The notes under the pieces were generated by a model. That model had not been told where the DNA came from. It was given only the letters and a program-made list of their open reading frames with translations, and searched no databases. A stretch of 64,000 bases of DNA from Macrostomum hystrix. Taxonomy: Eukaryota; Animalia; Platyhelminthes. This document shows positions 14,948 through 43,200 of the stretch, piece after piece. Every line of letters starts with the position of its first letter. Position 1 is the first letter of the stretch. The translations under genes and the position numbers were made by a program. The stretch covers positions 4,464,001 through 4,528,000 of the forward strand of contig CATNEN010000025.1 in assembly GCA_950097015.1 (NCBI GenBank), given 5' to 3'.

Positions 14948-17609
14948 ATGAGTTGCCACGCTTCTACACTTGTTAAATCCTCCGGCGATCGAGAAGAGGC
15001 CAAACAGATCATGAAAGAATCAGCGGCTGCAGAGATCGATCAGGTCCCCAGCTGTGCTGGTCGATGTGAGACTGTGCTCTATGCTGTCGTCTTCGCAGCC
15101 GCCTTCGTGTATTCGGCGAATGACTTCTACTGGGAGATTGGGAGACAGCCTCAGAAGCGTGAGTTGATATCAATCTTTGGAGCCGAGCACATTTGAGTAT
15201 CGGATGATGAATACGAACCTGCCTACCACAACGCTTCGACGTGACTTTATTACTCCATTTTAATTGCAGATATCCCGATTGTACTTACTGAATCCAGGAT
15301 GGCTTACAGAATGGACTGTGAGTTCTCTGCCATCGTTATTCTATACTTTCGAATCATGATCTTGAAAATTAGCATAGTAACTATCTTTAGTCGTTAAGTG
15401 GTTTGGAGTGAGACAGAGAGTAGCACTGCCAGACAAAAGCTTTGCCCTTTTAAAAGAAATGTTTTAGCAATTAAATTTTATCAGCCCTCTCCATTTATCG
15501 ACAGGAATCGACTGAAGAAAGTGAAGAATCTATTTTGATAAAATACAGCAATAATTTCTTTGCTATGAGCATCGTGTTCCTATTGGTCAGCCGTGCGTCG
15601 ATACGGTTGCTACCCAGATCGGTGAGCGCCTATTAAGCGATCATATCTGTGCAGGAGAGGACTTAATATTATTATAGCAAAAGGGTGTGTTAGCATTGGC
15701 ACATCCTTTGGTGACAATGGACCCCGAGCCAGCGGGGAGGCAATTCTGCCTATTCCCCTGACTCCTGAGCACACACGAACACAGCTAGACCTGGCTTTCT
15801 CATTGTCAGGCAGTGTACTACGCCTTGGAGGTTGGCCCTCGTGTGCGCAGACTGCACGACCAGCCCTCTCTGCGGCTGCGCCCCCAAATGAATGCGGCCT
15901 CGCCTAGGAATCGAGCTCGGGGACCTTGGTGTTTGAGACAGAGCCATCCATGCTGACGAAAGTCGACGGAATGCTTGACAAATCACTGCGATACTCTAGA
16001 GACTGATAGTAGGTCGAAATTTGTATTTCGAAGACTAAGCTAATAAATATAAAGTCACAAACTGTAATTATAGTATTTCATTAAAATTAAATACGCACCT
16101 GGGCCAATCATCAGTAGTTTTTCATAATTTTCATTTTCATAGTTTTATTAAACTGCAGACTCACTACCTGATCACTGGAGGTTACACACTGGCCCTGACT
16201 GCTGCTATAACTGGACCCAGGGCGATGGTTTACATGCTACTGCTTCATTGCGGTGCAGTCATCATGGGATATTTCTCCCTCATTGGCGTCTGGCTACTAG
16301 TCTTGTGTGCAATGATCCTGCACAACAATCAATCAGAACGGTTGCTAAACATCTTTCTGAATATGAATGTCGATCAGACGTACTATTTCTATCCGATCAT
16401 TGGCTATCTGTACTGTCGGTCCATCTCAGCCGGTCACAGTCTCAACAAGATGCTGCGGCAGCAGAGACAGGAGACTCCGAACGAGGCTCCGAGTAGTCTG
16501 CTCAGCTTTCTCCGCCTCCACCTGCCGCGTGCCGTCGCCTACGGATTCTACATGCCCTGGCACTTCGCCGGTCCGATCCTCACGTTTTCCGAGTTCTGTC
16601 GGGAGGCCGAGAAAGCTGACAGACTTGCGTGGGACCGGAAGCTGGTGCTGCGTCTGCTGTGGAGAGCAGCTCGCTTGCTGTTGTGGTTGCTGCTCGTTCA
16701 GGCGCTGCACCACTTCCTTCCAGTCGGAGCGTTTCTCAGCAGCATTCAAAACCTCGACGCTGTACCCTACAACCAACTTGTGTTCGCTATGTACCTGTAC
16801 GGCCACAACTTCATGCTGCTGCACGTGCAGTTGTACGGATGGCCGGGACTCGTAGCCAGGATTGACGGACTCGAGCTGCCGCACTGGCCAGACTGCGTCA
16901 GCCGCGTCTACACCTACAGGCAGATGTGGCGAGTGTTCGACAGAGGACTCGCCGCATTCATGCACGAACACATCTACATCCCCATGGGAGGCAGCCGTCG
17001 AGGTCTCGTCAGGCAGGTGTCCGCTGTGATAGCCAGTTTCGCTTTCGTCTCGGTCTACCACGGCGATACGTACGGCATGCGGGTGTGGGCAGCGTTGAAT
17101 GCCCTACAGCTGCTCATGGAGAGGATGGTCTGCGCTCTGTACAGGGCAAAGCTCAAGGATTGGCTGGTGAGCGTTTTAGTTCTTCTATTTGATAAAGGCG
17201 ACGGTTTAGACGGTTTATAAGAAAGCATATATTTTTTTCTTATTCAGAGCAGATTTTTGCCTCCGAAGATTCACCAACGTCTGATTGCGTACATTGTTGG
17301 ATGCAACCTCATAATTACATCCAGCTTTATCTTCGTTTTCTTCTTAAACGGAGCTCATGCATTATTGCTAGTTGTGGAGATTTTGAAACCTGTGTGTTTA
17401 TACAGTAAGTTTAATACATTTATTTTGCAAAATTCGGTTAAAAAATTCTACTAGCTGAAAAATATATTTGTCTCTTATTAACGTGCACATCAAATCCAGG
17501 GCCATGGTGGTATCTTCTGCTGACTTTGGCCTTGTCCTACTGCAGCGTTCAGATTTCACTGTTCTATGAGAGCGCAACGGAGTGCAAAACGAAAACTAAG
17601 ATAGCCTAA
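14948..17609 (+). CDS. HHAT: Hedgehog acyltransferase-like MBOAT protein, copy 1 (6 exons; apparent 1-nt frameshift across the exon 1/2 junction)
   Basis: Exons 14948-15158, 15270-15317, 15505-15621, 16159-17166, 17248-17404, 17500-17609. HHAT/Rasp-like motifs GPILTFSEF, MWRVFDRGL, YIPMGGS, FVSVYHG (catalytic His), WAALN. Exon layout matches copy 2. Start codon uncertain. Confidence 0.85.
15722..15955 (-). mobile_element. SINE family B copy in HHAT-like copy 1 intron 3
   Basis: Shares GGCAATTCTGCC, TTTCTCAT.GTCAGGCAGTGTAC and GGAATCGAGCTC.GGGACCTTGGTG with other B copies. Confidence 0.75.
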
Positions 17610-18400
17610 ATTTAATATTACTATAGTCTGCAGACGAAGCGAAACGGAAGGCAATGTGGCATTATTCTGTTTAGATTGAAATTCAGTTACATAGTTTTAC
17701 TTCTGCCTGCATTTTTTCTCTTTTAATGTTTGACTTTGCTCGACAAGTGCACGAATTTTTCGCGATAGTTGCGCACTACTGTTATGTCTGATGTAAAATA
17801 AAAATTATATAAAAAACTAAAAATTAAATGATCTGAAATTTAAAATCTTAATCGTTAACGCTGAATATTTAACGATTTGTGCAACTCACTCAGTTATTTA
17901 CTGGGACAATTTATTTTATTAAGATTAATAAAAAAGAAAATATACGATAACAGAATATAAATTAGGCATCGTTTTTGTTTTTCTACTTAAACTGTTTCGT
18001 TGCAAAATTTAACATATAATCATAAAAGGACTGATTTTAAAAAGACTTTAAAAAGACTGTTAAATTACAAATTTAAAAGTTTTGAAATCGATATTTGATG
18101 TTAATCAAAGACAGTTTTTTATATTTTAATAGTTGTTTAAGATAGATGTTTGGGATTGCTTGGCATTGTACGAAATTTGTGACCTACGTAATAAAGCAGT
18201 GGCTAATAATTTACTAATAATAATTAATATTCATTCACAACTTATGTAATTATTATAATCTAGGACCATATTAGCTATTGTACTTTTGTAATAAGTAAAG
18301 TTATTGTCTCTTTAAACGGTTTTAGATTGATATTATATATCCAATTTGTCCTGTTGTTGTCACTGTCGTGAATTCGTTAAATATTTAGGCTATAAAAAAA

Positions 18401-19041
18401 GGCAGAGCATATTCCCACGGTCCCATGCCGATAATTTCAATTTTATCCACACGGATCCGTGCCGATAATTTTCTGCTTATCCACACGGCAGCTTGTATAA
18501 ATAGGTCTACAACTCTTTATATATGCCGTGCCGTTAATTTCAATTGTATCCACACGGTTCTGTTCTTTGAAACGAGGCCCTTTCAGATTTGAACGTTTTG
18601 TTGAACCCTCGAGCCAATAGATCGACAAAGTTGCCAGTGTGTTACGACAGTGTTCTACATTTCGACCTACACATTAATTAACCGACATTAATGTCATCCT
18701 CTTTAATTATTTTAATAACAACTTACTAAATCTTTTGTCATCGTTACGTGTTTTCATTCGAATTGTATTGACTTAAAAAGTAAAAAGTCTATCAAAGAAA
18801 ATCATACGAGTCAACCAGCAGAATTCTAGTCAGCACCAAACTCGTCACACATTATACATCATTGTTATTCTTTTACACTATTCATTGATAGTGTACACTA
18901 TACACTATACTCTGAAGCAAAAGCCTTATGCTCAGAGACGAATTAGAATAGGTAGGGACTTGAAAGTAGACCCATTCATACAAGCTGCCGTGTGGATAAG
19001 CAGAAAATTATTGGCACGGGACCGTGGGAATAAGCACTTCC
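18401..19041. mobile_element. Non-autonomous TIR element, Mutator/MULE-like
   Basis: About 90-bp imperfect terminal inverted repeats starting GG (…TATTCCCACGGTCCC…CTTATCCACACGGCAGCTTGTAT…). 9-bp direct repeat ATAAAAAAA at 18392-18400 and 19042-19050. Superfamily inferred from TSD length. Confidence 0.7.
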
Positions 19042-20654
19042 ATAAAAAAAGGCTTATGTGCCCTATCTGACTTTTTTGGTCTGTTACATTTTTACTAAGT
19101 TTGACAGTAAGTTTGAGTTGTGTTTGTATTGCACTTAAGCTTAAAACAAAAGTTTAATAAATGATTATATACCAATTTTTTTTATATTTTAGTTCTTTAA
19201 ATAGGGGCCTATGTGAATTTCAAGAAGAAAAATAATGTACAGTAAGGCTTAAACAAACCTCCAGCCTATGGGCCAGATACAACCCTTAAAGCTCAAAAAT
19301 CTAGCTCCCTTTTAACATATATTCATAGGTCTACTCTGCTCTGCCTCATCTCCAGTGAAATTGGAGCTAGCTAGGAAGTAACAACTGTCTAATGTCTCAT
19401 CTCTCCCCAGTCTCATCTCTTCCCTGTCCTATCTCCCAATTTCTCACCTCACTTGACACTTTTTGTCTTAATTCTTCTATCTGAACTATAAAATTCATTG
19501 CAATAACCATTCTAGCCTCCTATGAGTGAGTCATTGGGAGTGAAGGACTCTAATTAGTTAATATGATCCACAAAGTTAAACTAATTTATTCAACTTATCT
19601 AGTGTCAAACATGAATATTAAAAAGTTTATATACAGCTAAAAATGTAAATATTAGTAACAAAATAAGCAGTTTTTAATTAGTAAATTTTTTTTCAAGTTT
19701 ACTTTTAAGCAAACTTTTTAAACATAATTTACAAATGAAAACTTCAATTTTCTGCTTAATTTCAGTATTGTGATGCAATAAGTGAGTGACAAGCGCTATC
19801 TTTGTTTTCCAGTGGTCACTGAAATGGATAAAAATATGCTACTTGTTGGACGGGTGAGTCTTTGATACATTTTACTTTTTTTCTGTATGGAATTATTTGT
19901 AAATTAGAAAAATGAATTAGAAAACTATTAAATGAAATTCTATGTAAATTGAAATATTAGTAGTTTTGTTAAGTTCAATTTTATTTTAGATACTGCATAC
20001 TAAATATTTCAATCCCTTTCAAATTTTCTAACTTTGTTGATTGCAAGGATAGCTATAAAGCAATTTTCGTCTATGTTTGTTACTTCTCTTTTAGAATCTG
20101 CACCTTTGATCTGTGATCGCATTGATTTTTACTCAATATTTTCTGTTGTATTTACTAAAGTAAGTGATTTATAGTTTACCTTTCTAGGCGTATTTTAAAA
20201 GAAAGCTTAAAAAATTGTTCCAAAAGAAAGTTTTGCTTATAATACTAATTATTTAGGCTAAAACTATTATTAACCCACTAAGAGTGCATTGCACAAAATT
20301 AATTAATGCATTTGATGTGCTAAGAGCCCAACTTACCTTTCAATAATTGCGTGCCATTTTGTACTGGTTAACTAACACTAGCCAGGGAATCGAACTTCGA
20401 ACTTTTCACATTTATTAGGATTTTATTGCAATGTTTTTCATCGGCCTGTCGTATTGCAGTTGTGCGAGAGCGCCTATCCGGCTATCAACAGCTCAGCCCT
20501 GCCGCGCTCCGTCAGTTTTCCACGCGAGATGGCCGAATCTACGGCTCAGGATTTGGCCTACGATGAGGACTTTATGCAGCCATTCGAGCCGCTAGCCTGT
20601 TAGTGATGCCTTTCTCTTGATTTTTTTGCGAACAACTGCAGGAACCGGAAGACG

Positions 20655-21168
20655 AAAGGAATGAACAGAATGAGAGTGTGACAAGAAAGAAATGAACAGA
20701 ATGAGAGTGTGACAAGAAAGAAATGAACAGAATGAGAGTGTGACAAGAAAGGAATGAACAGAATGAGAGTGTGACAAGAAAGAAATGAACAGAATGAGAG
20801 TGTGACAAGAAAGGAATGAACAGAATGAGAGTGTGACAAGAAGAGAATGAACAGAATGAGAGTGTGACAAGAAGGGAATGAACAGAATGAGAGTGTGACA
20901 AGAAGGGAATGAACAGAATGAGAGTGTGACAAGAAGAGAATGAACAGAATGAGAGTGTGACAAGAAGGAAATGAACAGAATGAGAGTGTGACAAGAAGGA
21001 AATGAACAGAATGAGAGTGTGACAAGAAGGAAATGAACAGAATGAGAGTGTGACAAGAAGGAAATGAACAGAATGAGAGTGTGACAAGAAGGAAATGAAC
21101 AGAATGAGAGTGTGACAAGAAGGAAATGAACAGAATGAGAGTGTGACAAGAAGGAAATGAACAGAATG
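20655..21168. repeat. 31-bp minisatellite (GAACAGAATGAGAGTGTGACAAGAAGGAAAT)
   Basis: Direct periodicity. Confidence 0.96.
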
Positions 21169-21411
21169 GCGAGAGTTTAGCAAAATCAAAATAAGAAAGT
21201 ACGCGTACAACGGTCTATCTACGATAAAACGATATGACGAAACGTGGGAGAGATTACAGATAAGTCGACAGTTAGTGCATTGTGTTCGTTCACTTGCCCA
21301 TTGCCGACGCCGCAGATCACTCAGGCAGTCGGGCTGGTCATCACTCCGGCCTGGACTCGGCTGTATCCAACTTGGACCTGTTTGCCCAGCTCGAGCTAGC
21401 CCAGCACCTAG

Positions 21412-24400
21412 GACTACGTACGCTCCGGTGCCAATCGATTTTCTTCAGCAAATGCCGCGGCTGCTGCTGCTGCTGCTGGCTTTGCTGTTGCTGCGGCCGC
21501 AGGGGGTTCGCCAGCACGCTTAGCCAACTCGTCAATGTCTGACCAGATGTCGCGCAGTGATTCGTGTTTAGCTGCCGTCGCGGCCGCGGCTGCCGACGCC
21601 GAAGCAGCCGGTGTCGGTAAGCCGCTATTTGATCCCGAGGACGATGCGGCCGTCGCCTTAGCAACTAACATTGACGGCGGCATGGCAATCAGCATCGGGC
21701 AGAGCCAATCATCGGCTAATGTACGCCAGATCCTAGGCAAGAGCGCCAGTCCCAACTATCAGGTTGTGGTTGGCATGGACGCTTCCGTTGCTATGAGCGG
21801 GACCAGCGCCGGCAGTAACATGAGCACCTGGATGGCTCTGGCAAAATCTAATAAACGGTTTGTCAGCACCAGCGATCTCGAGGCCAGCGACGCCACTGTT
21901 GACGAAGCCAGGCCGACTGCCGCAGCCGCCGCGCCCACCAAGCCACCTATGACCACCTGGACTGCTGTGCGCACCTCCTCTATTAAGGATATCGCCGCGG
22001 CCTCCAGCTCCGCCGGTGCCACTAAAACCTGGGCGGGTCAGCAACAGCAGCAGCAGCCATCTAATAACTCAGGCGGGGAGAGCGCTTGGCGTCAATTGAA
22101 ATCAGCCGGTGGTAGTCGCCTAGTTTCCTGGCAAGAGTTAAACAGAATTGTGCGAGACGCAAGACCGTTGGACGCCGCTGATCAGGTGAGAGTACGGGAG
22201 ATCCGATTAGCCTCTGTTATTATATATAATAAGCCAGTAGACGCAGCAGTTGAAAAAACATAGGCTGCGGGTCTGGTGTCACCAAATGATGTGCCATTGC
22301 CCACAGCCCTTATTATTTATGTTTTTGTATTATGCACCAACTCACCGTTCCACACAGAAATCTCGTCACGAGATGTCATCAAGCACTACCCAGCAGACCG
22401 CCGTTGCCTGGCGCAAGCAACAGCAGCCGGAGCAGCCCAAGCAAGCTCAACAGCAGACTGAGGAGGAACAGCTGCTGCTACAACAGCAACAGCTGCGCCA
22501 ACAGCAGCAGCAGAATCGGTATTCTGGCACACTGTTGGAATTATTCAAACGCGCCACTAATACTCCAACGGCATCGTCTATGGCAACTGCTCCGGCTGCT
22601 CACAACCAGGCGGCCGCGGTGCTAGCGGCTCAGCCGGAATCCACTTTGCGTTTCCTACACGGCGGCGGGCCCGGCTTTCGCGAATTTCGCCGACGCGCCC
22701 GCGAACTAGTGGATCATCAGCAGCAGTTCCCGACTGGCGCGCGTCGATCACTCAACTCCCGCGGCTCCGGCGTCGGCCGTAGCAACTCAGATCTTCAGCA
22801 CGGTAGGCGCGCTGGCGCCGCGCACGAGCATCTTCCCAGTTTGGGATTTCTGCGCGACTCCCTGCCGCTGGGAGAACCGTCAACTTCGGCGTCTATTTTC
22901 GATCCAGCCGGCGACTCGGGCATCGGGACGGCAGTCGGCGATGGCAGCGTGTCAACACCTGCAGCTAGCTCCGGTGGACCAAGCTTCGTCTGTAGAAATT
23001 GCGGCCATCCGCAGCATCAGCAGCAGCAGTCCAAGCGAGGATCCGGCGTCAAACAGAAAAGATCGCAATCGTTGGACACAACCGCTGTTGTCCGCAGGCC
23101 GCCGCTGCTGCCGCCAGCCGCTGACGAGGTAAGTCAACGCTATCGACGTGTAGTGTGGCAGTGCAGTTTTCATGAGAAGTATCTATATACATATATAAAT
23201 GCGCAATGAGAGAGAAGTGCAGCAAAGCCTAATTCGCCCTAGCGCGCACGCGTTCGCTAAACAGAAGTGAGGGGCAAGTCATGCTGGAATGAGGGCAGAG
23301 CCCAAATGGCCTGCAAATCAGCCACCAGAGAAGGAGTTCGGCCTTCGTCACGGCGTAGCCGCTCAGGAGGCTGGTGCAGGAGGACCAGCGACAGCGGGTT
23401 CTGGTCGCCGCGGCCATGGCTTCGCAGACAATAATAGCCCAGCAGCATTTGACGCCGCCGGCGCCGGGTGTTGCTCAGGGCTGGGACACCAGCGCGGGCC
23501 ATCAGGTCTCTGGACGGCAGTTTCTCCGAGTAGCGCAGTACGGAGCTACTGCCTATGCTGCTCTGACTTCACTCATAATGCCAATGGTTAACTTTTTCAA
23601 CGGTAACTGATTTAACAATCAATATTTTGACTTAGCTTTGAAATAATTTATCACCAAAACTACTAATTAACCAGGCCGATGGCAAATCCGCCGAGCGACA
23701 TCGACGCGCCGCTGCTCGACGCCGGCTGGCGGCGGCGGCTGATTCGGCAGGCAAAAAGCAGCGGGCTCTAGGCGGAGGCGCTAAGCGGACGCGCAGCGAG
23801 CCGCACCGTCTGGCTGGCGCCGCCGGCCTGTCCGGTGTGTACGAGATGACGCAAAGCCTCACAGACTCGCAGGAAGATGAGGCTGCGGCGGCGTCGACAA
23901 ATGCCGACGATCGGCAGCAACGATCGAACAAGAACTCGTCGGCTGGGCAGCGAGACTACGCCGACGATGACGACGAAGGTGGGGGCGGTTTTCGCGCCAA
24001 GAAGTCTGTATCATTCTGCGACCGGATTCAGTTTCACAGTCCGAAGGGCAGAGCGCCTGGCAGTCCAACTGGTGGTCAGGTTTGGCGCGCTGTCGGCTCC
24101 ACAGCCGATCTTGGCGGCGTTGGTGCAGGCCAGCCAGCCAATTTCGGCGACGCGCCTCACCGGCAGCAGACCCTGCTGCGTAGGCCGCTTAGCTTGCAAT
24201 TGAACTACGATGTGCAGGTTTGTTTTCTTAGCTAGTTTTTAGAGGCTCGTTGCCATTGCGAAAAGCACATAATAAACGTCAATTTTTTCATTTGAACGTG
24301 TCCCTTTCATTTTCTTGTGCAAACAATTCTATCCAGTTTTTCATGCTTTTAAAGTATTCGTGAACTTTAAAAATTAGTCCTGAAATTTAAACGAACTCGC

Positions 24401-26320
24401 GAAATTTAAAAGTACATAAAAGTATTAAAAGTACATTTAAAGTACACGTGAACTTAAAAAGTACATATACAATTTAAAGTACACGTGAACATAAAAATTA
24501 CACTAAACGTAAAAAGTACACGTGAACTTAAGAAGTACATGTGAACTTAAAAGTACTCCTGAACTTAAAAAGTACTCGTATAAATTTGTGCCATCCCGTC
24601 TCCAATTGCACTCAGGTAATTCCACAACAGGTAGGCCTCTACGGTGACAACGATAGTCCGCCGTTGGTTTTCTGCGGCTCCCCGGTCGGCTCGCCCAGGC
24701 GAAGCCACGACGCCGCTGCGGCTGCGGCAGCTTCCAGCCAGCTGCAGCAAACTCGGTTAGACAAACTCGGCCGTCTGGTCACTGACGCCATTCGTGGCGT
24801 CAACGATCTGATCCTAGCTGCCACAGCTTCCCCATTGGCCGCAGCGGCAGCTGCCGACGCTTCGGATCAGCAGCGCCAGCAGCAGCGGCTGGCTAGCGTG
24901 CTAGCTCAGAGCCTCTGCCCGCCTTTGCATGGCCTGCTGACTGACGAACTGGTGATCTCTGGCGGCGGCGGCAGCGTCAGCGGCGGCAGTCGGCTGTCGT
25001 TTGTTCGCAATAGGTCGCAGCTCTGGCAGCTGATTGAGGAGACCTGCAAGCCGGGCAGCCAGCCGGCTAGCCGACGCTTAAACGAGTGCCTGCGACTTGT
25101 GCGCTCCGTCAACGGCCTGTCTACTGAGAGACTCAAGTTTAACGCGTTTGTGGCGGCTTGTCTGAAGTGAGTGGCTGGACTTTAGTGCTGTGATTCCTAA
25201 TCCCCTTCATACATTTAATTAAATTATATTACTTGGTTAGATTCGTACACTAGGGGTTGTAGCCTAGTGGTTAGGGCGTCGGACTAACAACTTGAAGGTC
25301 GGGGGTTCGATTCCCAACTCCAATGGAATAATTTGTGTCCTTTAGCAAGGCACTTAATTCTGCATTGCTTCAGTTCACCCAGCTGTTAAATGGCTACCAG
25401 CATTATTAGCTGGGTTAATTGAGGGTGGGTGTGGCGTCCACCCAGTCCATGGACTGAACAGCCGTACGCAGCCTTCAGATGCGCCGCGCAATAGCTGCGG
25501 CTGTGCTGTCGGCTGATAGGGGCAAGTGTAATCGATTGATTTTGTTTAAATTGTTTCAATTTTGTCCTGATGATCCTCAATATTGGGATCTCGGCGTGGT
25601 TGATTTTTATCCCAGCTGCTTTGGTTACCAATGCGATACTATTAATCTCTGATCCAAAAAATTCGTTCGATACCGATAAAAGAAGTTCCTATTTGGGATC
25701 TAATTCAAACCATCTATGATCCGATTCCAACTGCCCGCAGCTCCAAGCAGTTGAGCGCCTGGTTCCACCACGCCACAGCCAGTGAGTCAATTCTCAAGCG
25801 CTACTACAAGCCCAGCGCGTTTTTGCGCAGCGCCCAGACTGTGCACTGCGAACTGTTCGCCGACCTGTCAACCTCCCTGGAGCTGCTCAACTCGCACTCG
25901 TTCTCTATCGACCTGACCGCCGCCGGTTCGGCTTCGTCTTCAACTTCGTCAACATCGGTGTCTCGCAAGTCGATTGGCCAGCAGCCGTTGAAGGCTAGGC
26001 ACGACATCAAGGCCACGCCGCCTCCGCCGCCGCCGCAGCATCAGCGAGCTTCGGCTCCGGCCCCGCCGCCGCGCGTTCAAAGCCGCCTGCCGCGACCTAC
26101 CGGGCCGGATTATTCCTCTGCCTCCTCCGTGGCCAGCTCGGCGACATCGGCCACCTCGCCAGCTCCGTCTGTGGCCCCGGCTTTCGGTGGAAAATCTTCC
26201 ACTAAATCAGGCGGCGGCGTTGGCGGCATTCGCTCCACCTTGTCCGGCCTGATGCGTCGGCCAGGCTCATCTTCTTCTTCTAGTAGCAAGCAGCAGCAGA
26301 GCTCTACTGGCAAGCGCTAG
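21412..26320 (+). CDS. RUN-domain protein, RUSC1/RUSC2-like, with a long low-complexity N-terminus
   Basis: Phase-compatible exons about 21412-22185, 22358-23128, 23359-23586, 23675-24217, 24616-25166, 25741-26320. RUN domain LCPPLHGLLTD...WQLIEETCKPG...RLKFNAFVAACLN|SKQLSAWF...YYKPSAFL...LELLNSHSFSIDL resembles RUSC proteins. 5' end unresolved (possible ATG exon at 20529-20598). Confidence 0.8.
24350..24575. repeat. Degenerate ~20-bp AT-rich repeat (AAAGTACACGTGAACTTAA) in a RUN-gene intron
   Basis: Recurring GTACACGTGAAC / AAAGTAC motifs. Confidence 0.7.
25251..25535 (+). mobile_element. SINE family A copy in the intron splitting the RUN domain
   Basis: TAGGGGTTGTAGCCTAGTGGTTAGGGCG...GGTTCGATTCCC, then CORE-like domain and body matching 8690-8960. 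Confidence 0.85.
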
Positions 26321-26974
26321 GTTGTCAATGGCGTCAACTTTCCTTAGGGTTTGTTTTTTTAAAAGACACTATCGGACTATCTTTCCCATTTCCTGTGTTG
26401 TTTTCTGCTTCTAAAATAGTTGTTTTTGTCTTGTTGCTTTTAACATTAAAAAATGACCACTCTATTTCCTAGGGAGAGACCACGGGGCTATTTCAAATAC
26501 CCGCTGCCTACTTCACCATAGCTCCCAAATCGAATGAAAAATTACGCCCCGTGGTATTTTCTACTGTTTACAGTCAATTTATTTTATTAACGCAAAGCGC
26601 AAAGGTACTTAAGCGTTGCGTCTCCGTTGTTTTGATTTTGTGGTTGGAATATCTTACAAGAAATCTTTGGAGAAAAACTTATTAAGAGTATATTCCTACG
26701 TGACTACTAGTGACAAGCGTCAGTAGCATCTAAGTGTTTATTTTATGTTGTTTATTTCACAAGCATAGTAAATTCCCTAATGTTTCAATATCCTCTGCTG
26801 ATAAGCATGTTTTCAGAAATTTCTATCATTTCGTAGTTCACAATCTTTCATCGTTACAGCTTCGTGTTATAATTATTGTTGTCTTTTTGTCAGTTTTTTA
26901 CACCAACTCTCATCGTATCGGAATCTCATTTTGCGACATTTTTCAACTCTTGTGAGTTCCTTCAGTGTTTTTCA

Positions 26975-30090: not shown

Positions 30091-30714
30091 ATTTCTTCAG
30101 AGTGTGTTGCTGCAGCGACTAAAGCAAATCTGCTTTAATATAACTGGTTTCTCTATGAACAATTAATACTACTATAAGATTAAGTAGTACGGTCAAGTAG
30201 GATTATTCGTTTCTTATCAGAAACCCGATTTGCATAGATAGACAGTGTCAAAAGTATAAATTTGCTTTGCATGCGGGCGGGCGGGCGTATATAATTATTT
30301 ACTTTTATTCTTTGTCAGACAGATAGATAAGGCCCGGACAGCAAAGCCATGGTCTGTTTGTCTAATCTAGTTCAAATTTATACAGCACAAAAGCTTGCCT
30401 TTATTGTTCCTTCCTTGGGAAAGTGTGTAATTAGCACTGCCCGCCAATCTCATTACTCTGCTGCAAACTGTGGCCCCTTAAACATTGCAGACTGACACGG
30501 CTAACAATTAATATTTATTACAGTTGCTTCGTGTTTAGCTGACCCTCAACTAGTGCCAGTCAATAAATAGGCTTTGATTTTCTGAGCGACTGTGCAAAAC
30601 GTTTACGTTTTATGAGTGGTAGAGTTTTTGGACTCATTTTCAAGACTTCATTTGGGTTCGCCAATGCCATAAAACGAAATTTTTATTCCTGGTTTTCAAT
30701 TCAAAGAATCTCGA

Positions 30715-33700: not shown

Positions 33701-34915
33701 ATCTCGATGCTGTCAACTCCTGATCCCAAATCCCTACTGGGATCTCGATGCTGTCGATTCCTGATCCCAAATCCCTACTGGGATCTCGATGCTGTCAACT
33801 CCTGATCCCAAATCCATACTGGGATCTCGATGCTGTCGACTCCTGATCCCAAATCCCTACTGGGATCTCGATGCTGTCGATTCCTGATCCCAAATCCCTA
33901 CTGGGATCTCGATGCTGTCGATTCCTGATCCCAAATCCCTACTGCGATCTCGATGCTGTCGATTCCTGATCCCAAATCCCTACTGGGATCTCGATGCTGT
34001 CGATTCGTGATCCCAAATCCCTACTGGGATCTCGATGCTGTCGATTCCTGATCCCAAATCCCTACTGGGATCTCGATGCTGTCGATTCCTGATCCCAAAT
34101 CCCTACTGCGAACTCGATGCTGTCGATTCCTGATCCCAAATCCCTACTGCGAACTCGATGCTGTCGATTCCTGATCCCAAATCCCTACTGGGATCTCGAT
34201 GCTGTCGATTCCTGATCCCAAATCCCTACTGGGATCTCGATGCTGTCGATTCCTGATCCCAAATCCATACTGGGATCTCGATGCTGTCAACTCCTGATCC
34301 CAAATCCCTACTGGGATCTCGATGCTGTCGATTCCTGATCCCAAATCCCTACTGGGATCTCGATGCTGTCAACTCCTGATCCCAAATCCATACTGGGATC
34401 TCGATGCTGTCGACTCCTGATCCCAAATCCCTACTGGGATCTCGATGCTGTCGATTCCTGATCCCAAATCCCTACTGGGATCTCGATGCTGTCGATTCCT
34501 GATCCCAAATCCCTACTGCGATCTCGATGCTGTCGATTCCTGATCCCAAATCCCTACTGGGATCTCGATGCTGTCGATTCGTGATCCCAAATCCCTACTG
34601 GGATCTCGATGCTGTCGATTCCTGATCCCAAATCCCTACTGGGATCTCGATGCTGTCGATTCCTGATCCCAAATCCCTACTGCGAACTCGATGCTGTCGA
34701 TTCCTGATCCCAAATCCATACTGGGATCTCGATGCTGTCAACTCCTGATCCCAAATCCCTACTGGGATCTCGATGCTGTCAACTCCTGATCCCAAATCCC
34801 TACTGGGATCTCGATGCTGTCAACTCCTGATCCCAAATCCCTACTGGGATCTCGATGCTGTCGACTCCTGATCCCAAATCCCTACTGGGATCTCGATGCT
34901 ATCGATTCCTGATCC
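30715..34915. repeat. 41-bp satellite (GATCTCGATGCTGTCGATTCCTGATCCCAAATCCCTACTGG), about 100 units, with higher-order structure
   Basis: Direct periodicity; diagnostic variants recur at 11/14/16-unit spacings. Confidence 0.98.
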
Positions 34916-35419
34916 CCGATTCCTAGAATCCCAAATTCGTGATAGTAGTTTCTAATTAACGGTTGCCATAGAAGCCTTTCAATCTCTATTGTCGCATTGT
35001 CAGTGCAGCTATTCCAGTAATTAGAGTTCAAGGGAACAGATACCTTACAAAGCAAGTTTTACATTTTTATAGCTTGATATTTTCCCATTCTAATCCCCTT
35101 ATAGAGTCTTTATTCTGAAGAAATTCTCCACTTGAAGCGGTTTTCTTGGCTTCAATATATATATACATTATACATTTACGTACAAACGTATACCTGGTCG
35201 CACAGCAGTCTCAACAATGCCAAAAAAGACTCGACAGACAAGAGCCATCAAAGTGGGCAGAGGAAAATTCGATAAGCAGCTTGCCCCCTTCCCATTCCCC
35301 ACTTCCCGGCAGCAACTTCTTCCGCTCAGCTGGAGATCTTCAACTACTTGAGCTTGATATGTGAGCACTGTGTCTCAGACTAAGCACTTGTTTAAAATGC
35401 TTTTAAATATCTATATCAC

Positions 35420-35434
35420 TGACTTGCTTACTTG

Positions 35435-35465
<31 letters not shown>

Positions 35466-36066
35466 GCTTACTTGCTTCCTTACTTGCTTACTTATTGCTT
35501 ACTTACTTGCTTGCTTACTTACTTACTTGCTTACTTACTTACTTGCTTACTTGCTTACTTGCTTACTTACTTGCTTACTTACTTGCTTACTTACTTACTT
35601 GCTTACTTGCTTACTTGCTTACTTACTTGCTTGCTTAATTACTTGCTTACTTACTTGCTTACTTGCTTACTTACTTGCTTACTTACTTGCTTACTTGCTT
35701 ACTTGCTTACTTACTTGCTTACTTACTTGCTTACTTACTTACTTGCTTACTTGCTTACTTGCTTACTTACTTGCTTGCTTAATTACTTGCTTACTTACTT
35801 ACTTGCTTACTTGCTTACTTGCTTACTTACTTGCTTACTTACTTACTTGCTTCCTTACTTGCTTACTTACTTACTTACTTGCTTACTTACTTGCTTACTT
35901 GCTTACTTACTTGCTTACTTACTTACTTACTTGCTTACTTACTTGCTTACTTACTTACTTGCTTACTTGCTTACTTGCTTACTTACTTGCTTACTTACTT
36001 GCTTACTTACTTGCTTACTTACTTGCTTACTTACTTGCTTACTTACTTGCTTACTTACTTGCTTAC
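35420..36066. repeat. (ACTT/GCTT)n tetranucleotide microsatellite
   Basis: Direct. Confidence 0.97.
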
Positions 36067-37384
36067 ATATCCAACTTTTGTTTACTTCCAAGAGCAGCCA
36101 GTTTTTCAGTCCTAGAATGTCACCTTTACGGGGCAAAGTTGTCCAATTTTGAGCCGTAAAATTTCCATAATTTATTCTTGGACTATGCAGCCTCAGTTCT
36201 GCAAGCAACAGTTGAGATGAGGATCCGGGATGGAAGGGAGGCAGGAAGAAGCTCGAAGCGGCTAAATAAAATTATCCGCCCGAATTGACTGTCCCGCACA
36301 ATGAGAGAAAGAAGAGGCCGGGAAGGGGAGCAGGCGGGGGGCCAGGCAGAAGGAGGCGCTGACAGAGAGAGGAGAAGTTAGTTCAGAGGCAGCGGTCGGC
36401 TAATTGCTTTCTGCAAAGTCCCTCACGGCCCATCGCACACGAGGGCCGAGTCAGAGATGGAAAGACAGATAGAGAGAGAGAGAGCGAGGCCGAATCTCAT
36501 CTCTCTATTTCCGTGTTTCCGTGTTCGTGCGTTGTATGTGTTGTCAGCGATACCCTGACAATGCCGATGTCAGCTACTAAAGGTAGCAGTCAGGGAATGC
36601 ACATATATATTATGCGTTATATTTGCTATACTCGGTTCACCTACAAGCAGGGCATACCGCTAGGAATGGAACAGGGGGGGCGGTGGCAGGCAAGTTCTTC
36701 AGAAAGAAACTTTTTTTGCCTAACCATTTCTGCCTTTTGGGAGCGGACAGGAAGAGAAAATGGGAATAAAGAGGCCTTCCCATTTCCTCTATTCCCTTCC
36801 TCCACCATCTCCTCTCTCTGCAGTTCCTTAGCTAGCCTGACTGGCTGGTCTGGGAGATGATTTGAACAGCGGGGTCGCCAAGGGGACTACGCTAATCCAT
36901 TCACATTTGCACAGTCGCGCTACACTAACTAAAAGCCTGGATAGAATTTAAGGCTGGATAGAGGGAGCTGGGGTGTGCGGGGTACCGGTGGGGGCCGCAT
37001 TCCAGTTGAGGCACCAATGCCGACTGTACTTATTTCTGGTTTCTAGCCGGCTGACCGACCAACCAAACTAAACGCGGACCCACCCCCAGGCTTTGGTGAG
37101 TGGGGGTGGTGGCGCTGGTTCCCTCTTTGGTCCGACTGCTTCCACGCTCGGCTCCGCCCTCTCCCCCCCCCCCTACCCCCCGCTCCCTGTCCCGCCACCC
37201 CAGAAGAAGTGTTTCGCTAAAAGCCGGGCAAGGGGGCCTCTGAGTGTGCGCATATTTGAACTGTAACTGATTTCACACCGCGGTCCAAGCTGCGCAAGAA
37301 AGCCAGAACTAGCAGAGAGCTAGCAGACTAGAAAGCTAATTCAATTCCACTAGCCGCCATAACCAAAGCCAAGGTTACTGCACG

Positions 37385-38545
37385 ATGAGCGGCAAGAAGG
37401 TGGTGCAGATCCCTCCGGGCTTCAAGGACCTGCTGCAGGACTTCACTGTGGCCGTGCTCAAAGAGGCGCCGGACGATGTTGTTGATTTCGCCGTCGAGTA
37501 CTTCACAAGACTGCGCATGGAACGGCATCAGCAGCAGGAGGATGAAGCAGAAGCTGCCGCTGAGGCCGCCGAGGCAGACTCGGACGTCGATGACGAGCCG
37601 ATGCAGGCGCCGCCGCCGCGCCGCGGTCCCCGCCGAGTTGCAGTCGCCGGCGAGAGCTTCGATCCGGAGAAGGAGGACGATGAACCAGTTGAAGTGGTTG
37701 TGCATCAAAAGACGGAGGAGCAGCACCAGAGGCTCAGCGAGGCGGTCAAGCACATCCTGCTTTTCCGCTGTCTGGACGAGGACCAGATGCGTGACGTCAT
37801 CAACGCTATGTTCGAGCGGCGCTGCGAGCCGGGCGACAAGATCATCACCCAGGGCGAGGACGGCGACAATTTCTACGTTATCGAATCCGGCGTCTACGAT
37901 ATCTATGTACTGATCAACGGCCAGGACACCAAGGTCGGCCAGTACGACAACAAGGGCTCGTTTGGGGAGCTGGCGCTGATGTACAATGCGCCCAGGGCCG
38001 CCACAATCCAGTGCGCCTCGCCTGGCAGCATCTGGGCCATGGACCGGGACACCTTCCGCCGCCTGGTGCTGAAGAAGGCCTTCCAGAAGCGCGTCATGTA
38101 CGAGAACCTCATCGACTCCGTGCCGCTGCTGAAGGAGCTGGCGCCCTACGAGCGGATGAGCATCGCCGACGCGTTGAAGTCGCGCGTATACGAAGACGGC
38201 GATAGTATCATTGTGCAAGGCGACGTTGGCAATGAGATGTACTTTATTGAGGACGGCGAGGTGCGCATCACGCGCAAAACTCAGGACGGCAGCGGCGAAA
38301 TGGAGCTCTCCCGGCTGCACAAGGGCGGCTACTTCGGCGAGCTCGCCCTGCTGACCAAGCAGCCTCGGGCCGCCAACGTCTACGCCTGCGGCGGCCGCTG
38401 CAAGGTGGCCGTCCTGGACGTCGGCTCGTTTGAGCGCCTCCTCGGCCCCTGCCTGGACATCATGCGGCGATCCATTGACAGCTACCAGCAGCAGCTCACC
38501 AGCCTCTTTGGCAGCATGGAAGCTGTGCCGGATCTGCGGGCCTGA
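37385..38545 (+). CDS. PRKAR2: cAMP-dependent protein kinase type II regulatory subunit, single coding exon, 386 aa
   Basis: RIIa D/D domain ([32 protein letters not shown]), inhibitor segment [13 protein letters not shown], and two cNMP domains with PBCs [16 protein letters not shown] and [16 protein letters not shown]. Confidence 0.96.
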
Positions 38546-40249
38546 ATAATGGAGCCACAGCCGCAGGAGGAGGACATTTGACGTCAATTTTAGCTGCTTT
38601 TCTATTCTAAGAGTGTCTTTAATCCACTTTCTCTGCTTTGTTCTAATGAAACCAGCATTACTCATCCCCATCCCTTTCCTACCTCACCATCTTCTCTGTC
38701 ACTTTTCTCTGCAATCTCGCAGTCTTCTTCACCGTTCTTCACTGCTAACACAAAGACTGCGATCTAGCCATGCTCCCAGTAACTAGAAAATAGTCTTTGT
38801 CTATTTTTTAAAATAGGAATAAACTGGATCTGGGTGAACATGTTGACGCCTAGCTTTAAATCTACACGCGTTCCTACTTCCTGCTTTTGCGAGTGTTTGT
38901 TTGTTTGTCCGACTGTTTGTTTGGTTGTTTGTTTGTTTGTTTGTTTGTTTGGTTGTTTGTCTGGTTTTTAGCTTGCAGCCTATCTTCGGGTGGGACTCCC
39001 AGTAATTAGTAAATTATTGTGCATCAGTGAATATATTAATTTGCACTTTATTTTAACTAACAGCTAAATACATGTATTTCCTATAGACTATCAAGTTAAT
39101 TAATTCTGTATTTAAATAAACAATTAGAAAGACATAATATATTTGAAAAGCGCACCCTACTGTTGTAATTGCCTTTTCATAATCCAGTAGTAATGATTTA
39201 TTATATTTTTAATCAATAGGCGCACAATGTACTTTAACTCTATAATCACTATCCGCTAGTTGCAAAGCCATTCAAATCCTTTTCTACCTTGAAATAAATG
39301 ACAGGCGAGTCTTAGAGAAAAAGAGTGGATTCTTGCCACACGTGCCCTAAAAGAAAAATGACAATATAATGAATTACTAGACTCGCTTTTTCTTAAAGCT
39401 TTAGACCTCCCAAAGTGCTTATTATTATTTTATCTAGAGGTTAAAAGTGCATGCTCAGCGAACGAGTTTACTATTCTGTTATTCATTTTTTTGTAGAAAC
39501 GGTCGTTCAAATATAAATAAGTCTAAATTGTACTTTTGCCATATCGGATCTATAGAGTCTCAATGACAGCATCTGCTCACACTCATATTTGAGTTTCATT
39601 TGAGTTGTTTTTGTTCGCAAAAAAAAATTACTTGAGAAACTGTGAAAAATAAGGCCGTGAGGAAATAAGCTTTTGGACGAAAACTTTTCGGATACGGGCC
39701 TAATCCGAATGGCACTCCGCTAGATTAAGTTTGAGGGAAATGGGAAAAGGGAAATGGAAAGAGGAGAGGAGGGAAGGGAATACGCGCTTCCCCGTTTTGC
39801 CGTCCCAAGTAGATATGCGAAATGGGACTAATAAATATGGCTATATAGCATGAAGGCAGCCCTACTTACTGGCCAGCAACACACTGCCCCGGCCTCCTTA
39901 TCCCCTATTCCCCAGGAGAAAAAGGTGCCGCCCAAGGCTGTTCGGCCTAAATACCGTACCGTCCATCTGTCTGCGTCTGTCTATTTTGAGTTTAAATCAA
40001 TTCTTCTAGTAGGGGCGGTAGAGGCGGGCGTACAAAGGCAGACAGTACAGTCAGCCAGTCTCTTATCTGTGCGTGCTGGTGTGTGTGCAGTGTAAGTACA
40101 TTACACGAGTATTAAATGTACATGCGGCACTACCCGGCGCAGTTAAACATGGATATGCCTTGGTTTATAACTAATTAGCATCTTAGCCTCTTTCAGTCAT
40201 TAGTGAAAAAAGGAATCCAACGATTTACTACAGCAGCCCCCCGCTTCTT

Positions 40250-43200
40250 TCATTCGTCCTTGACGACATCATCGTCGATTTGTCTCTCTCCAACGCGGCC
40301 AGTCTTTGTCGCGGGACAGCCGCTGCTGCTTTCATGTTTAAACGACAGTTGCACAATGCAGTAGCTGACAAGCAGTGTTAACAGATAATACCAGAGTGGC
40401 TCTGAAAGGTGGCGAGTGATCAGACGGTAACTAGCTAGCTACCTATTCAATCTGTGATTAATTTCACTTCATTTTGAGCGGTTAACGCGTCTGGCTCTCG
40501 CACCAAGGTCGATTCCGCGGCGAGGTCACATTCATTTGGATTAGGGGGCTTAACACAAATTAGGGCCAACCTTCATGGCACAGTGAGGGTGTACACTGCC
40601 TGACGATGAGAAAGTCAGGACAGATGTACACACCTGTGTGAGTGTGTGCCTGAGTACGGTATCTGTGTACTCAGCACAGCCGCAGCTACTGCACGGCGCA
40701 TCTGAAGGCTGCGTAAGGCTGTTCAGTCCATGGACTGAAACTGAAACTGAACTGAAAAAATGCAGAATTCAGTGTCTTTTCCTGACTTTCTCAACGTCAG
40801 GCAGTGTACACTCTCACTGTGCCTTGGAGGTTGGCCCTCAAGGGCGCAAATTGCGCGACAAGCCACCAAGCCTTCTCGCCGTGGCTGCACCCCAAATAAA
40901 TGTGGCCTCGCCGCGGAATCGACCTTGGTGCGAGAAGCAAACGCGTTAACCGCTCTGCCACTCAGCCCCTATTATGTATGATAGATTAAGATTATTCTAT
41001 TGGTTTTTAAAGTCCTTTTACGCAAATTCATTTAAAATCCCTTTAAACATGACATTACAGTGCTATGACTACAGAGAATACCACATTTTAAAATATATAA
41101 TTGGGCCATAGACAAAACTTGCCAAAATTATAGCCCTGACCTTCAAGTGTTAGCGGCTTGACCAGAGTCGACATAATTAGCGTTGAACTTCTGGAAAAGA
41201 AGAAAATGAAGATGGTCCAGGAGGACAGGAACAGGTTGTGCGCTATGACCGCCGCCACAATGCGCTGATGAAGCGAAGGGCCGAGTGCTCGATTCTGAAA
41301 GACGCGTTTTAGGTGAGGTGTAATTTTTGTGGTTCAGGAAACATCGGATAGAGCGAGAAATTTCAGCACGTTTTCTGGATTTTCACTGCGATTGGTTGAA
41401 TATTTTAATAGAAAAAAGGAAAATGTGGGTAAACCCTGGGTCCTTCTACTGTCAATATCAACTAAACGCTCACCAGCCAATCCTTGAGCTTTGCCCTGTA
41501 CAGAGCGCAGACCATTCTCTCCATGAGCAGCTGAAGGGCATTCAACGCTGCCCAAACCCGCACGCCGTACGTATCGCCGTGGTAGACCGAGACGAAAGCG
41601 AAGCTGGCTATCACAGCGGACACCTGCCTGACGAGACCTCGACGGCTGCCTCCCATAGGGATGTAGATGTGTTCGTGCATGAATGCGGCGAGTCCTCTGT
41701 CGAACACTCGCCACATCTGCCTGTAGGTGTAGACGCGGCTGACGCAGTCTGGCCAGTGAGGCAGCTCGAGTCCGTCAATCCTGGCTACGAGTCCCGGCCA
41801 TCCGTACAACTGCACGTGCAGCAGCATGAAGTTGTGGCCGTACAGGTACATAGCGAACACAAGTTGGTTGTAGGGCACAGCGTCGAGGTTTTGAATGCTG
41901 CTGAGAAACGCTCCGACTGGAAGGAAGTGGTGCAGCGCCTGAACGAGCAGCAACCACAACAGCAAGCGAGCTGCTCTCCACAGCAGACGCAGCACCAGCT
42001 TCCGGTCCCACGCAAGTCTGTCAGCTTTCTCGGCCTCCTGACAGAACTCGGAAAACGTGAGGATCGGACCGGCGAAGTGCCAGGGCATGTAGAATCCGTA
42101 GGCGACGGCACGCGGCAGGTGGAGGCGGAGAAAGTTGAGCAGACTACTCGGAGCCTCGTTCGGAGTCTCCTGTCTCTGCTGCCGCAGCATCTTGTTGAGA
42201 CTGTGACCGGCTGAGATGGACCGGCAGTACAGATAGCCAATGATCGGGTAGAACATCAGTATATTTGTATTTGTTCCGTATAGTGTCAGATGCTTATAGA
42301 GCCAAACACTCCAACTCGAGTTCAGCAGTGTGATTGCAGCCAAAACCAGCAGCCAGACGCCAGCTAAGGAGAAATATCCCATGCAGATGGCACCGCAATG
42401 CAGCAGCAACATATAGACCGTGGTGCGAACTCCAACAATCGACGCCGTCACTGCCAGCGTGTAGCCTGCTGTCACCAGGTAGTGTATCTGAATGTTTGAG
42501 TTAGTATTTTAGAACACCTGGTCAACGAAGCCTTCACACTGTATCCTCGCTTCAATCAATCACACTGCATAATCCAAGTCAGCTCCTGAACGACCACTCC
42601 CACACATATTCTACCTTGATCGACAATTCAACCAAACAAACACCAACTTGATCGACCACTATACCACACAAACACCAACTTGATCGATCACTATACCACA
42701 CAAATACCAACTTGATCGACCACTATACCACACAAATACCAACTTGATCGACCACTATACCACACAAATACCAACTTGATCGACCACTATACCACACAAA
42801 TACCAACTTGATCGACTACTATACCACACAAATACCAACTTGATCGACTACTATACCACACAAATACCAACTTGATCGACCACTATACCACACAAATACC
42901 AACTTGATCGACTACTATACCACACAAATACCAACCTTGGTCGACTACTATACCACACAAATACCAACTTGATCGACTACTATACCACACAAATACCAAC
43001 TTGATCGACTACTATACCACACAAATACCAACATTGGTCGACTACTATACCACACAAATACCAACATTGGTCGACTACTATACCACACAAATACCAACAT
43101 TGGTCGACTACTATACCACACAAATACCAACATTGGTCGACTACTATACCACACAAATACCAACTTGATCGACTACTATACCACACAAATACCAACATTG

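What the first reader, a model, noticed from the sequence alone, without database searches (positions are those of the whole stretch)
16387..42253. Inverted HHAT paralogs: divergent ends but a near-identical ~790-bp catalytic core (gene-conversion tract)
16387-~17180 and 42253-~41463 differ by about a dozen bases by eye (3 residue changes in 260 aa: S/N, R/Q, M/V). Identity continues about 12 nt into the next intron. The first part of the same exon and exons 1-3 and 5-6 are strongly diverged (e.g. SRFLPPKIHQRLIAY vs NRALGPSLHQRIVAA). The abrupt mid-exon step is the signature of recent interlocus conversion over the acyl-CoA/catalytic region (MWRVFD, YHG). Both copies keep the catalytic His, unlike vertebrate HHATL.
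Basis: partly seen in the sequence, partly recalled or inferred. Interest (0 to 1): 0.75.

Follow-up and report, generated by a model that had tools for sequence, protein, structure and literature searches.

The report
Paired flatworm HHAT genes share core
Two old, tail-to-tail copies of a Hedgehog-acyltransferase-like gene in a Macrostomum flatworm have had their catalytic middle made almost identical by DNA copying between them while both ends stay very different, and the same mosaic occurs in a second Macrostomum species; it is a clean case of a known process, not a new mechanism.

Summary
Arms 16387-17176 (+) and 41464-42253 (-) are 790 nt with 12 differences: 9 synonymous and 3 replacements (S/N, R/Q, M/V).

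The tract is the last 260 codons of exon 4, plus 10-15 nt of intron 4, in two convergent six-exon HHAT-like MBOAT genes 22.6 kb apart. Synonymous divergence (dS) is 0.05 in the tract. It is about 1.2 in the first 76 codons of the same exon and saturated in exons 1-3 and 5-6. Selection on the protein cannot produce that step; non-allelic gene conversion can.

The genome (220 Mb, 42 contigs) fits Macrostomum hystrix. It is not human.

New here: the two co-located M. lignano homologues show the same mosaic at protein level, starting within one codon of the same place. In the core, 63 residues differ between species but are shared by both paralogs within each species; none follows an orthology pattern. 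The likeliest reading is long-lived or repeated concerted evolution of the catalytic part. Whether the duplication predates the species split is unresolved.

Both copies keep the Asp/His dyad and the haem Cys.

This is a new member of a known kind, of moderate interest. Earlier scan notes, which I did not check, report similar inverted mosaic pairs (TEP, cGLR) elsewhere in this genome.

The parts
14948..17609 (+). Gene A, HHAT-like MBOAT, six exons by my reading: e1 14948-15158, e2 15298-15317 (uncertain), e3 15505-15621, e4 16159-17166, e5 17248-17404, e6 17500-17609; 540 aa
   Evidence: tblastn of M. lignano P0001/P0002. GT-AG sites and phases read from the sequence. The joined frame is open to a stop at 17609. 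The exon 2 acceptor homologous to copy B's is 1 nt out of frame; only a 20-nt microexon keeps the frame.
40250..45337 (-). Gene B, HHAT-like MBOAT, six exons: e1 45337-45217, e2 44295-44249, e3 44172-44059, e4 42487-41474, e5 41294-41141, e6 40401-40250; 533 aa; same intron phases as A (1,0,0,0,1)
16387..17176 (+). Converted tract in A: last 260 codons of exon 4 (16387-17166) plus the first 10 nt of intron 4
   Evidence: dS 0.051, dN 0.005. It holds the MWRVFD (Asp) and YHG (His) motifs and the haem-Cys equivalent.
41464..42253 (-). Converted tract in B: last 260 codons of exon 4 (42253-41474) plus the first 10 nt of intron 4
16159..16386 (+). Diverged 5' part of exon 4 in A (76 codons: two to three helices, then a variable loop)
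   Evidence: dS 1.18, dN 0.43 against B. Codons 1-53: dS about 1.0; loop codons 54-76: dS 2.6, with a 2-codon indel.
42254..42487 (-). Diverged 5' part of exon 4 in B (78 codons)
   Evidence: repeat I3 at 72%.
17610..40249 (.). 22.6-kb spacer between the two 3' ends: RUN-domain gene (about 21.5-26.3 kb, +), intronless PKA RII subunit gene (37385-38545, +), several satellite arrays
   Evidence: No A/B homology apart from a short mobile-element fragment.

Best explanation
A and B are an old pair of convergent HHAT-like acyltransferase genes. Non-allelic (interlocus) gene conversion has copied the segment for the catalytic part of the enzyme from one copy onto the other. That segment is the last 260 codons of exon 4, roughly human HHAT residues 167-415, and holds the Asp/His dyad, the acyl-CoA site residues and the haem Cys. 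The N-terminal helices (exons 1-3 and the first 76 codons of exon 4) and the C-terminal helices (exons 5-6) evolve separately.

Shown: the step in identity, the 20-fold or greater drop in dS, intact frames, and the same protein mosaic in M. lignano.

Inferred: the process is repeated or long-lived (concerted evolution). Its edges are held where alignable, constrained sequence ends: a fast-evolving loop with indels on the 5' side and an intron on the 3' side. There heteroduplex can no longer form, so the island of homology renews itself while the flanks drift or specialise. Both proteins are probably active acyltransferases with the same catalytic engine and different peripheral helices. Their substrates are unknown.
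For: The two arms are 790 nt and 98% identical, with only two copies in the 220-Mb assembly.

Core dS is 0.051 and dN 0.005. The 5' part of the same exon has dS 1.18, and the other exons have pS 0.78-0.88, which is saturated. Fisher p = 1e-51. Identity crosses the splice site by 10-15 nt, then the introns are unalignable.

M. lignano P0001-type and P0002-type proteins are identical from the LFYPISG motif to RIWAALNA apart from private single-residue changes, and are 45-64% identical outside it. Each of three M. lignano contigs carries one gene of each type with consecutive accession numbers.

Four-taxon site patterns in the core: 63 sites group by species and 0 by either orthology scheme. In the flanks the counts are 6, 4 and 1. 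The core tree groups by species (support 96/93 and 98/97), and orthology topologies cost 216 lnL units (p-AU 0.001 or less).

The tract starts at the first turn of a helix after a loop in the AlphaFold model of P0001.

After the last conversion, 9 synonymous against 3 replacement changes suggest purifying selection on both copies.
Against: The second-species evidence is therefore protein only, and orientation and dS there are unknown.

Flank trees do not recover the (A,P0001),(B,P0002) orthology expected for one ancestral duplication. The best tree is B,(A,(P0001,P0002)), with support 66-91. The AU test gives p = 0.043 for (B,P0002) and p = 0.23 for (A,B). Lineage-specific duplications, or older conversion of the flanks, therefore stay open.

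GC3 is raised in the core (0.72-0.78 against 0.52-0.58), as GC-biased conversion would predict. But the unpaired paralogs on C39 and C1 also have high core GC3 (0.64 and 0.77), so this is not diagnostic.

No reads, population data or expression data were available. Copy A has an unresolved 1-nt frame problem at exon 2.
Confidence: 0.8

Rival explanations
1. One-off events: each species had a single recent conversion (or each duplicated the gene on its own and then had one conversion). The matching 5' edge merely reflects where alignable sequence stops. There is no sustained concerted evolution.
For: The flank trees do not reject species-wise grouping of the paralogs (AU p = 0.23 for A+B; P0001+P0002 are joined at 91/91). 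The 3' edges differ between species: the exon end in this genome, about 22 codons earlier in M. lignano. With 12 differences and a longest perfect run of 162 nt, conversion may already be dying out here.
Against: The 5' edges coincide within one codon in two species. All 63 species-specific core substitutions are shared by both paralogs, with none left over from before a supposed single event. One gene of each type sits on the same contig in both species, which fits an inherited pair.
Confidence: 0.15
2. Assembly or polishing artefact: short-read polishing or a collapsed repeat made the two cores look alike.
For: The published M. hystrix assembly that matches this genome was built with canu and polished with Arrow and Pilon (PMC10468722). 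Short reads can be placed on the wrong paralog. Scan notes list other mosaic inverted pairs in this genome.
Against: Twelve copy-specific bases survive. A 790-nt repeat is far shorter than long reads, and both copies sit in unique flanks on one contig. Mis-polishing cannot turn about 60-70% identity into 98% with knife-sharp edges. An independent species, assembly and annotation shows the same mosaic.
Confidence: 0.03
3. Protein-level purifying selection alone keeps the cores alike, without any DNA exchange.
For: The core carries the catalytic and cofactor residues and is the best conserved part of the family. The M. lignano pair P0004/P0005, which lies on separate contigs, is also more alike in the core (87%) than in the N flank (71%).
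Against: Synonymous sites are also nearly identical (9 differences in 182 synonymous sites, against pS 0.55-0.88 elsewhere). Identity continues into the intron. The core differs by 27% in protein between species while being 97-99% identical within each species.
Confidence: 0.02

Closest known systems
Human Hedgehog acyltransferase HHAT (PDB 7Q1U, 7MHY, 7URF)
   Same: It is the best solved relative by sequence (E 3e-30 for exon 4; E 1e-28 for full-length P0001). It is also the best by fold: the model of P0001 gives TM 0.74/0.83 over about 523 columns, against about 0.5 for DltB, PORCN and LPCAT3. Asp339, His379 and the haem ligand Cys324 are conserved. The plan of a conserved MBOAT core plus family-specific N- and C-terminal helices matches the description of HHAT (PMC8693861).
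   Different: Protein identity is only about 24-35%. This genome has four HHAT-like loci and one-to-one orthology was not established. Substrate and activity are untested. Human HHAT is a single gene with no conversion partner.
Mammalian HHATL (GUP1 homologue)
   Same: Same GUP1/HHAT clade of MBOATs. Automatic names of the M. lignano relatives include 'HHAT-like'.
   Different: HHATL has Leu in place of the catalytic His (PMC5831804). A, B and the two other paralogs here all keep Asp and His.
Partial concerted evolution of duplicated genes by interlocus gene conversion (for example Caenorhabditis paralogs, PMC3966223; copepod GOT1 paralogs with islands of divergence, PMC3728101)
   Same: A non-reciprocal tract of near-identity inside otherwise diverged paralogs, low dS confined to the tract, and diverged islands that persist beside it.
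   Different: Here the homogenised part is the catalytic portion of a multi-pass membrane enzyme, the pair is convergent with a 22.6-kb spacer, and the same 5' edge recurs in a second species. I saw only the titles and abstracts of those papers.
Other inverted mosaic pairs noted in this genome by the scan (TEP pair s1-351194; cGLR pair s1-310560)
   Same: They are described as tail-to-tail or inverted paralogs with near-identical tracts next to deeply diverged segments.
   Different: They are different gene families on other contigs. Those notes were not checked here.

Membership tests
MBOAT superfamily, HHAT/GUP1 clade | MBOAT domain above Pfam's gathering score | tested here: met
   PF03062 scores 89.7 and 91.5 bits against a cut-off of 27, for exon 4 of A and of B.
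MBOAT superfamily, HHAT/GUP1 clade | Closest solved relatives are HHAT, by sequence and by fold, including the HHAT-specific terminal helices | tested here: met
   Only HHAT chains match, at E 3e-30. The fold of the M. lignano homologue P0001 aligns over its full length with HHAT (TM 0.74/0.83) and much less well with other MBOATs. The fold was tested on the homologue, not on A or B themselves.
MBOAT superfamily, HHAT/GUP1 clade | Catalytic Asp339 and His379 equivalents | tested here: met
   MWRVFD aligns with human MWRYFD, and VYHG with YWHG. Both lie in the converted tract, so they are the same in A and B.
MBOAT superfamily, HHAT/GUP1 clade | Haem-ligand Cys324 equivalent (described as unique to HHAT in PMC8693861) | tested here: met
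   The Cys in the PDCVS motif aligns with human C324. It is invariant in alignment A2 (C377 of P0001).
MBOAT superfamily, HHAT/GUP1 clade | N-palmitoylation of Hedgehog (the function that names HHAT), and one-to-one orthology with HHAT | not testable with these tools
Four HHAT-like loci in this genome all match HHAT at similar strength.
Interlocus gene conversion / partial concerted evolution | Abrupt step in paralog identity that does not follow exon structure alone | tested here: met
   The step lies mid-exon at 16387 / 42253: 61% identity on one side, 98.5% on the other.
Interlocus gene conversion / partial concerted evolution | Synonymous divergence in the tract far below that of the flanks | tested here: met
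   dS is 0.051 against 1.18 in the same exon, and saturated in the other exons.
Interlocus gene conversion / partial concerted evolution | Phylogenetic incongruence: the tract groups paralogs by species, the flanks do not | tested here: inconclusive
   The core groups by species with strong support, and orthology topologies are rejected. The flank tree is weakly resolved and does not reject species-wise grouping. Site patterns are 63:0:0 in the core and 6:4:1 in the flanks.
Interlocus gene conversion / partial concerted evolution | Both loci and the tract confirmed by single long reads; tract edges polymorphic in populations | not testable with these tools
   No reads or population data could be reached.

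The most novel reading that the evidence does not exclude
The pair is a long-lived 'shared engine, private shell' arrangement, inherited from before the M. hystrix / M. lignano split. Conversion has kept the catalytic portion of two HHAT-like enzymes identical over a long period. Selection for different N- and C-terminal helices fixes the tract edges; in human HHAT these helices shape the gate and the haem pocket. Because the repeats are inverted, an occasional crossover inside the core would flip the 24-kb spacer and swap the C-terminal modules between the two genes, giving a natural domain-shuffling switch.
Probability: 0.2. Interest if true: 0.6.

Novelty: new member of a known kind. Interest (0 to 1): 0.42.

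Why it matters
It is a well-delimited natural example of how gene conversion can hold the catalytic part of a duplicated membrane enzyme identical while the peripheral helices diverge. The same edge is seen in two species, so it can serve as a marker system for conversion-tract rules in flatworms.

There is a practical warning too. Trees or orthology calls built on the conserved core of these genes will wrongly suggest recent, species-specific duplications.

It also shows that Macrostomum has an expanded set of HHAT-like enzymes that all look catalytically competent: four loci here. This raises the question of what they acylate besides Hedgehog, if anything. A and B are natural chimeras for asking what the terminal helices of HHAT do.

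Tried and rejected
Cross-species dS, orientation and DNA-level edges could not be obtained.

2. GC-biased conversion signature. GC3 is higher in the tract, but the unpaired paralogs show it too, so I dropped it as evidence.

3. Orthology of the flanks. ML trees and AU tests on the N, C and joined flanks were unresolved.

4. An older, wider tract over the first 53 codons of exon 4. A and B match at 38/53 residues against 33/53 across species, with dS about 1.0. This is suggestive only.

5. Swapped C-terminal modules, as a sign of a past inversion. A is nearest to P0001 in both flanks, so there is no sign of it.

6. Literature. No paper links Macrostomum or flatworm HHAT genes with gene conversion.

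7. P0021, a 43-aa metagenome fragment filed in a M. lignano cluster, is unrelated sequence.

8. The large representative protein search was not used. The family was already clear and the claim does not rest on absence of relatives.

9. No database search or fold was run on the joined six-exon models of A and B, because they have no reference. Searches used exon 4 by reference, and the fold used the M. lignano protein P0001. The joined models were built only inside scripts, for alignment, dN/dS and trees.
Full report
**What is there.** The window holds two inverted arms, 16387-17176 (+) and 41464-42253 (-), 790 nt long and 98% complementary. A pairwise alignment of 2.7 kb around each arm shows a block of near-identity with abrupt collapse on both sides. 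A base-by-base count gives 12 differences (9 transitions, 3 transversions), with a longest perfect run of 162 nt. The whole 220-Mb assembly contains only these two copies of the block, plus one 70% match on another contig.

**Organism.** The closest proteins in the public collection are from Macrostomum lignano, at 65-68% identity. The assembly has 220,453,370 bases in 42 contigs. That matches the published M. hystrix assembly of about 220 Mb in 42 contigs, built from an inbred line with canu and polished with Arrow and Pilon (PMC10468722). The contig is flatworm, not human. The species name is an inference from those numbers.

**Gene models.** Each arm lies in the large fourth exon of a six-exon gene. 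I placed the exons by tblastn with the M. lignano proteins and by reading GT-AG sites and phases.
- Gene A (+): e1 14948-15158, e2 15298-15317, e3 15505-15621, e4 16159-17166, e5 17248-17404, e6 17500-17609; 540 aa.
- Gene B (-): e1 45337-45217, e2 44295-44249, e3 44172-44059, e4 42487-41474, e5 41294-41141, e6 40401-40250; 533 aa.
- Intron phases are the same in both (1,0,0,0,1), and the joined frames are open.
- The genes are convergent, with their 3' ends 22.6 kb apart.
- The spacer holds a RUN-domain gene, an intronless PKA RII subunit gene and several satellite arrays.
- One uncertainty: in A, the acceptor that corresponds to B's exon 2 is 1 nt out of frame. Only a 20-nt microexon keeps the frame.

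**Family.** Exon 4 of each copy hits Pfam MBOAT (E 1e-25). Among solved structures it hits only human HHAT (E 3e-30). In that alignment the catalytic Asp339 and His379 and the haem ligand Cys324 of HHAT are conserved. Their roles are described in PMC8693861.

An AlphaFold model of the full-length M. lignano homologue P0001 (pLDDT 72, pTM 0.72) superposes on human HHAT over its whole length (TM 0.74/0.83). It fits other MBOATs much less well (about 0.5).

The genome has four HHAT-like loci: A, B, one on C39 and one on C1. All keep Asp and His, and all match HHAT at similar strength. Which of them, if any, is the Hedgehog enzyme is open.

**The step in divergence.** I made codon alignments and Nei-Gojobori estimates in scripts.

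| Region | dS | dN | Note |
|---|---|---|---|
| Tract, 260 codons | 0.051 | 0.005 | 9 synonymous and 3 replacement differences |
| First 76 codons of exon 4 | 1.18 | 0.43 | codons 1-53 about 1.0; loop codons 54-76 2.6, with an indel |
| Exons 1-3 and 5-6 | saturated (pS 0.78-0.88) | 0.81 and 0.63 | |

- Differing sites are 90 of 228 beside the tract against 12 of 780 inside it (Fisher p = 1e-51).
- Identity continues 10 nt into intron 4, and 14-15 nt if a 1-nt indel is allowed. After that the introns cannot be aligned.
- Protein-level selection cannot explain near-identity at synonymous and intronic sites. A non-reciprocal DNA transfer between the loci can.
- The 3:9 ratio of replacement to synonymous changes since the last transfer suggests both copies are under purifying selection, although the counts are small.

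**Second species.** The two M. lignano relatives, P0001 (556 aa) and P0002 (573 aa), show the same mosaic in protein.
- They are identical from the LFYPISG motif to RIWAALNA apart from private single changes.
- They are 45% identical in the N flank and 64% in the C flank.
- The start of identity is within one codon of the start in this window.
- The end is about 22 codons before the exon end, so the 3' edge differs between species.
- Cluster look-up shows three M. lignano contigs (56, 70 and 97 kb). Each carries one gene of each type with consecutive accession numbers, so the two genes sit together there too.
- In a four-sequence comparison, 63 core positions differ between species but are shared by both paralogs within each species. 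None follows either orthology pattern. In the flanks the counts are 6, 4 and 1.
- The core tree groups by species (96/93 and 98/97). Forcing orthology costs 216 lnL units (p-AU 0.001 or less).

**What remains open.**
- The flank tree is B,(A,(P0001,P0002)) with support 66-91. The AU test gives p = 0.043 for (B,P0002), 0.07 for (A,P0001) and 0.23 for (A,B).
- Three histories therefore remain possible: one ancestral duplication with sustained conversion, older conversion reaching into the flanks, or separate duplications in each lineage.
- I favour an inherited pair, because the two gene types sit together in both species and the 5' edge coincides. This is inference.
- GC3 is higher in the tract (0.72-0.78 against 0.52-0.58). 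The unpaired paralogs show the same trend, so it is not evidence for biased conversion.

**Mechanism proposed.**
- The tract corresponds to about residues 167-415 of human HHAT (alignment). This covers most, but not all, of the conserved MBOAT helices, with the dyad, the acyl-CoA gate residues and the haem Cys.
- In the model of P0001 the tract starts at residue 206, the first turn of helix 204-233, after a poorly conserved loop.
- The N flank is helices 45-196. The C flank is helices 473-555.
- In human HHAT the terminal helices are the family-specific parts that close the lateral gate and form the haem pocket (PMC8693861).
- My reading is that conversion needs alignable sequence. On the 5' side it stops at a loop that diverges fast and carries indels. 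On the 3' side it stops in the intron. Each conversion restores the homology that allows the next one, while the flanks are out of reach and diverge or specialise.
- This part is inferred, not shown.

**Artefact check.**
- A collapsed repeat is unlikely for 790 nt set in unique flanks on one contig.
- Mis-polishing cannot raise 60-70% identity to 98% with sharp edges while leaving 12 copy-specific bases.
- An independent species, assembly and annotation shows the same pattern.
- Raw reads were not available, so a small residual doubt remains.

**Known or new.** Interlocus gene conversion with islands of divergence is well documented (for example PMC3966223 and PMC3728101, seen). No paper in the library links it to flatworm HHAT genes. 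Earlier notes of this scan describe two other inverted mosaic pairs in the same genome, TEP and cGLR. I did not check them, but they suggest the pattern is common here. I class the finding as a new member of a known kind. The added point is that the same edge recurs in a second species.

**Limits of method.** No search or fold was run on the joined spliced models of A and B, which have no reference. Exon 4 was searched by reference and P0001 was folded instead. The joined models were used only inside scripts.

Noticed in passing
window 15159-15317: Copy A exon 2: the acceptor that corresponds to copy B's (exon from 15270) is 1 nt out of frame with exon 1's phase-1 donor. Only the acceptor at 15296-97 keeps the frame, giving a 20-nt microexon and about 10 fewer residues. 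It could be a real acceptor shift, a 1-nt assembly error, or early decay of A's 5' end.
   Followed up: partly
window 42600-43995 and 44495-45190: A 32-bp satellite (43 copies, 95% matches) fills most of intron 3 of gene B. A 24-bp-based array fills intron 1. Gene A's matching introns have neither.
   Followed up: partly
window 30708-34916, 26977-28523, 20656-21168, 35418-36066, 13226-13852: The spacer and flanks hold many long tandem arrays: 41 bp x 103, 21 bp x 74, 31 bp x 17, 8/12/32 bp x 20-80, and 16 bp x 40.
   Followed up: no
window 15750-15990, 25443-25508, 40476-40955: A short mobile-element-like repeat occurs in intron 3 of A, in the spacer, and as nested inverted copies in intron 5 of B (arms 92-95% alike). 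It is not part of the A/B homology.
   Followed up: no
window 14236-14547: A near-perfect hairpin (137-nt arms, 93%, 38-nt loop) lies about 400 nt upstream of gene A's start codon.
   Followed up: no
window 37385-38545 (+): An intronless 386-aa PKA regulatory subunit gene (RIIa dimerisation domain plus two cNMP-binding domains) lies between the two HHAT-like genes. An earlier scan note comments on its inhibitor site.
   Followed up: partly
L006 (G000:C39:10877395-10881378) and L007 (G000:C1:24482935-24486342): Two further HHAT-like loci exist in the same genome: 42% identity, and 51% over part of the core. Both keep the Asp and His motifs. The C1 copy has an intron inside the region that is a single exon in A and B, and it is followed by a long tandem array.
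   Followed up: partly
M. lignano proteins P0004 / P0005: A second M. lignano HHAT-like pair, on separate contigs, is 71% identical in the N flank and 87% in the core and C flank. This is a much milder gradient, probably homeologues from the genome duplication.
   Followed up: no
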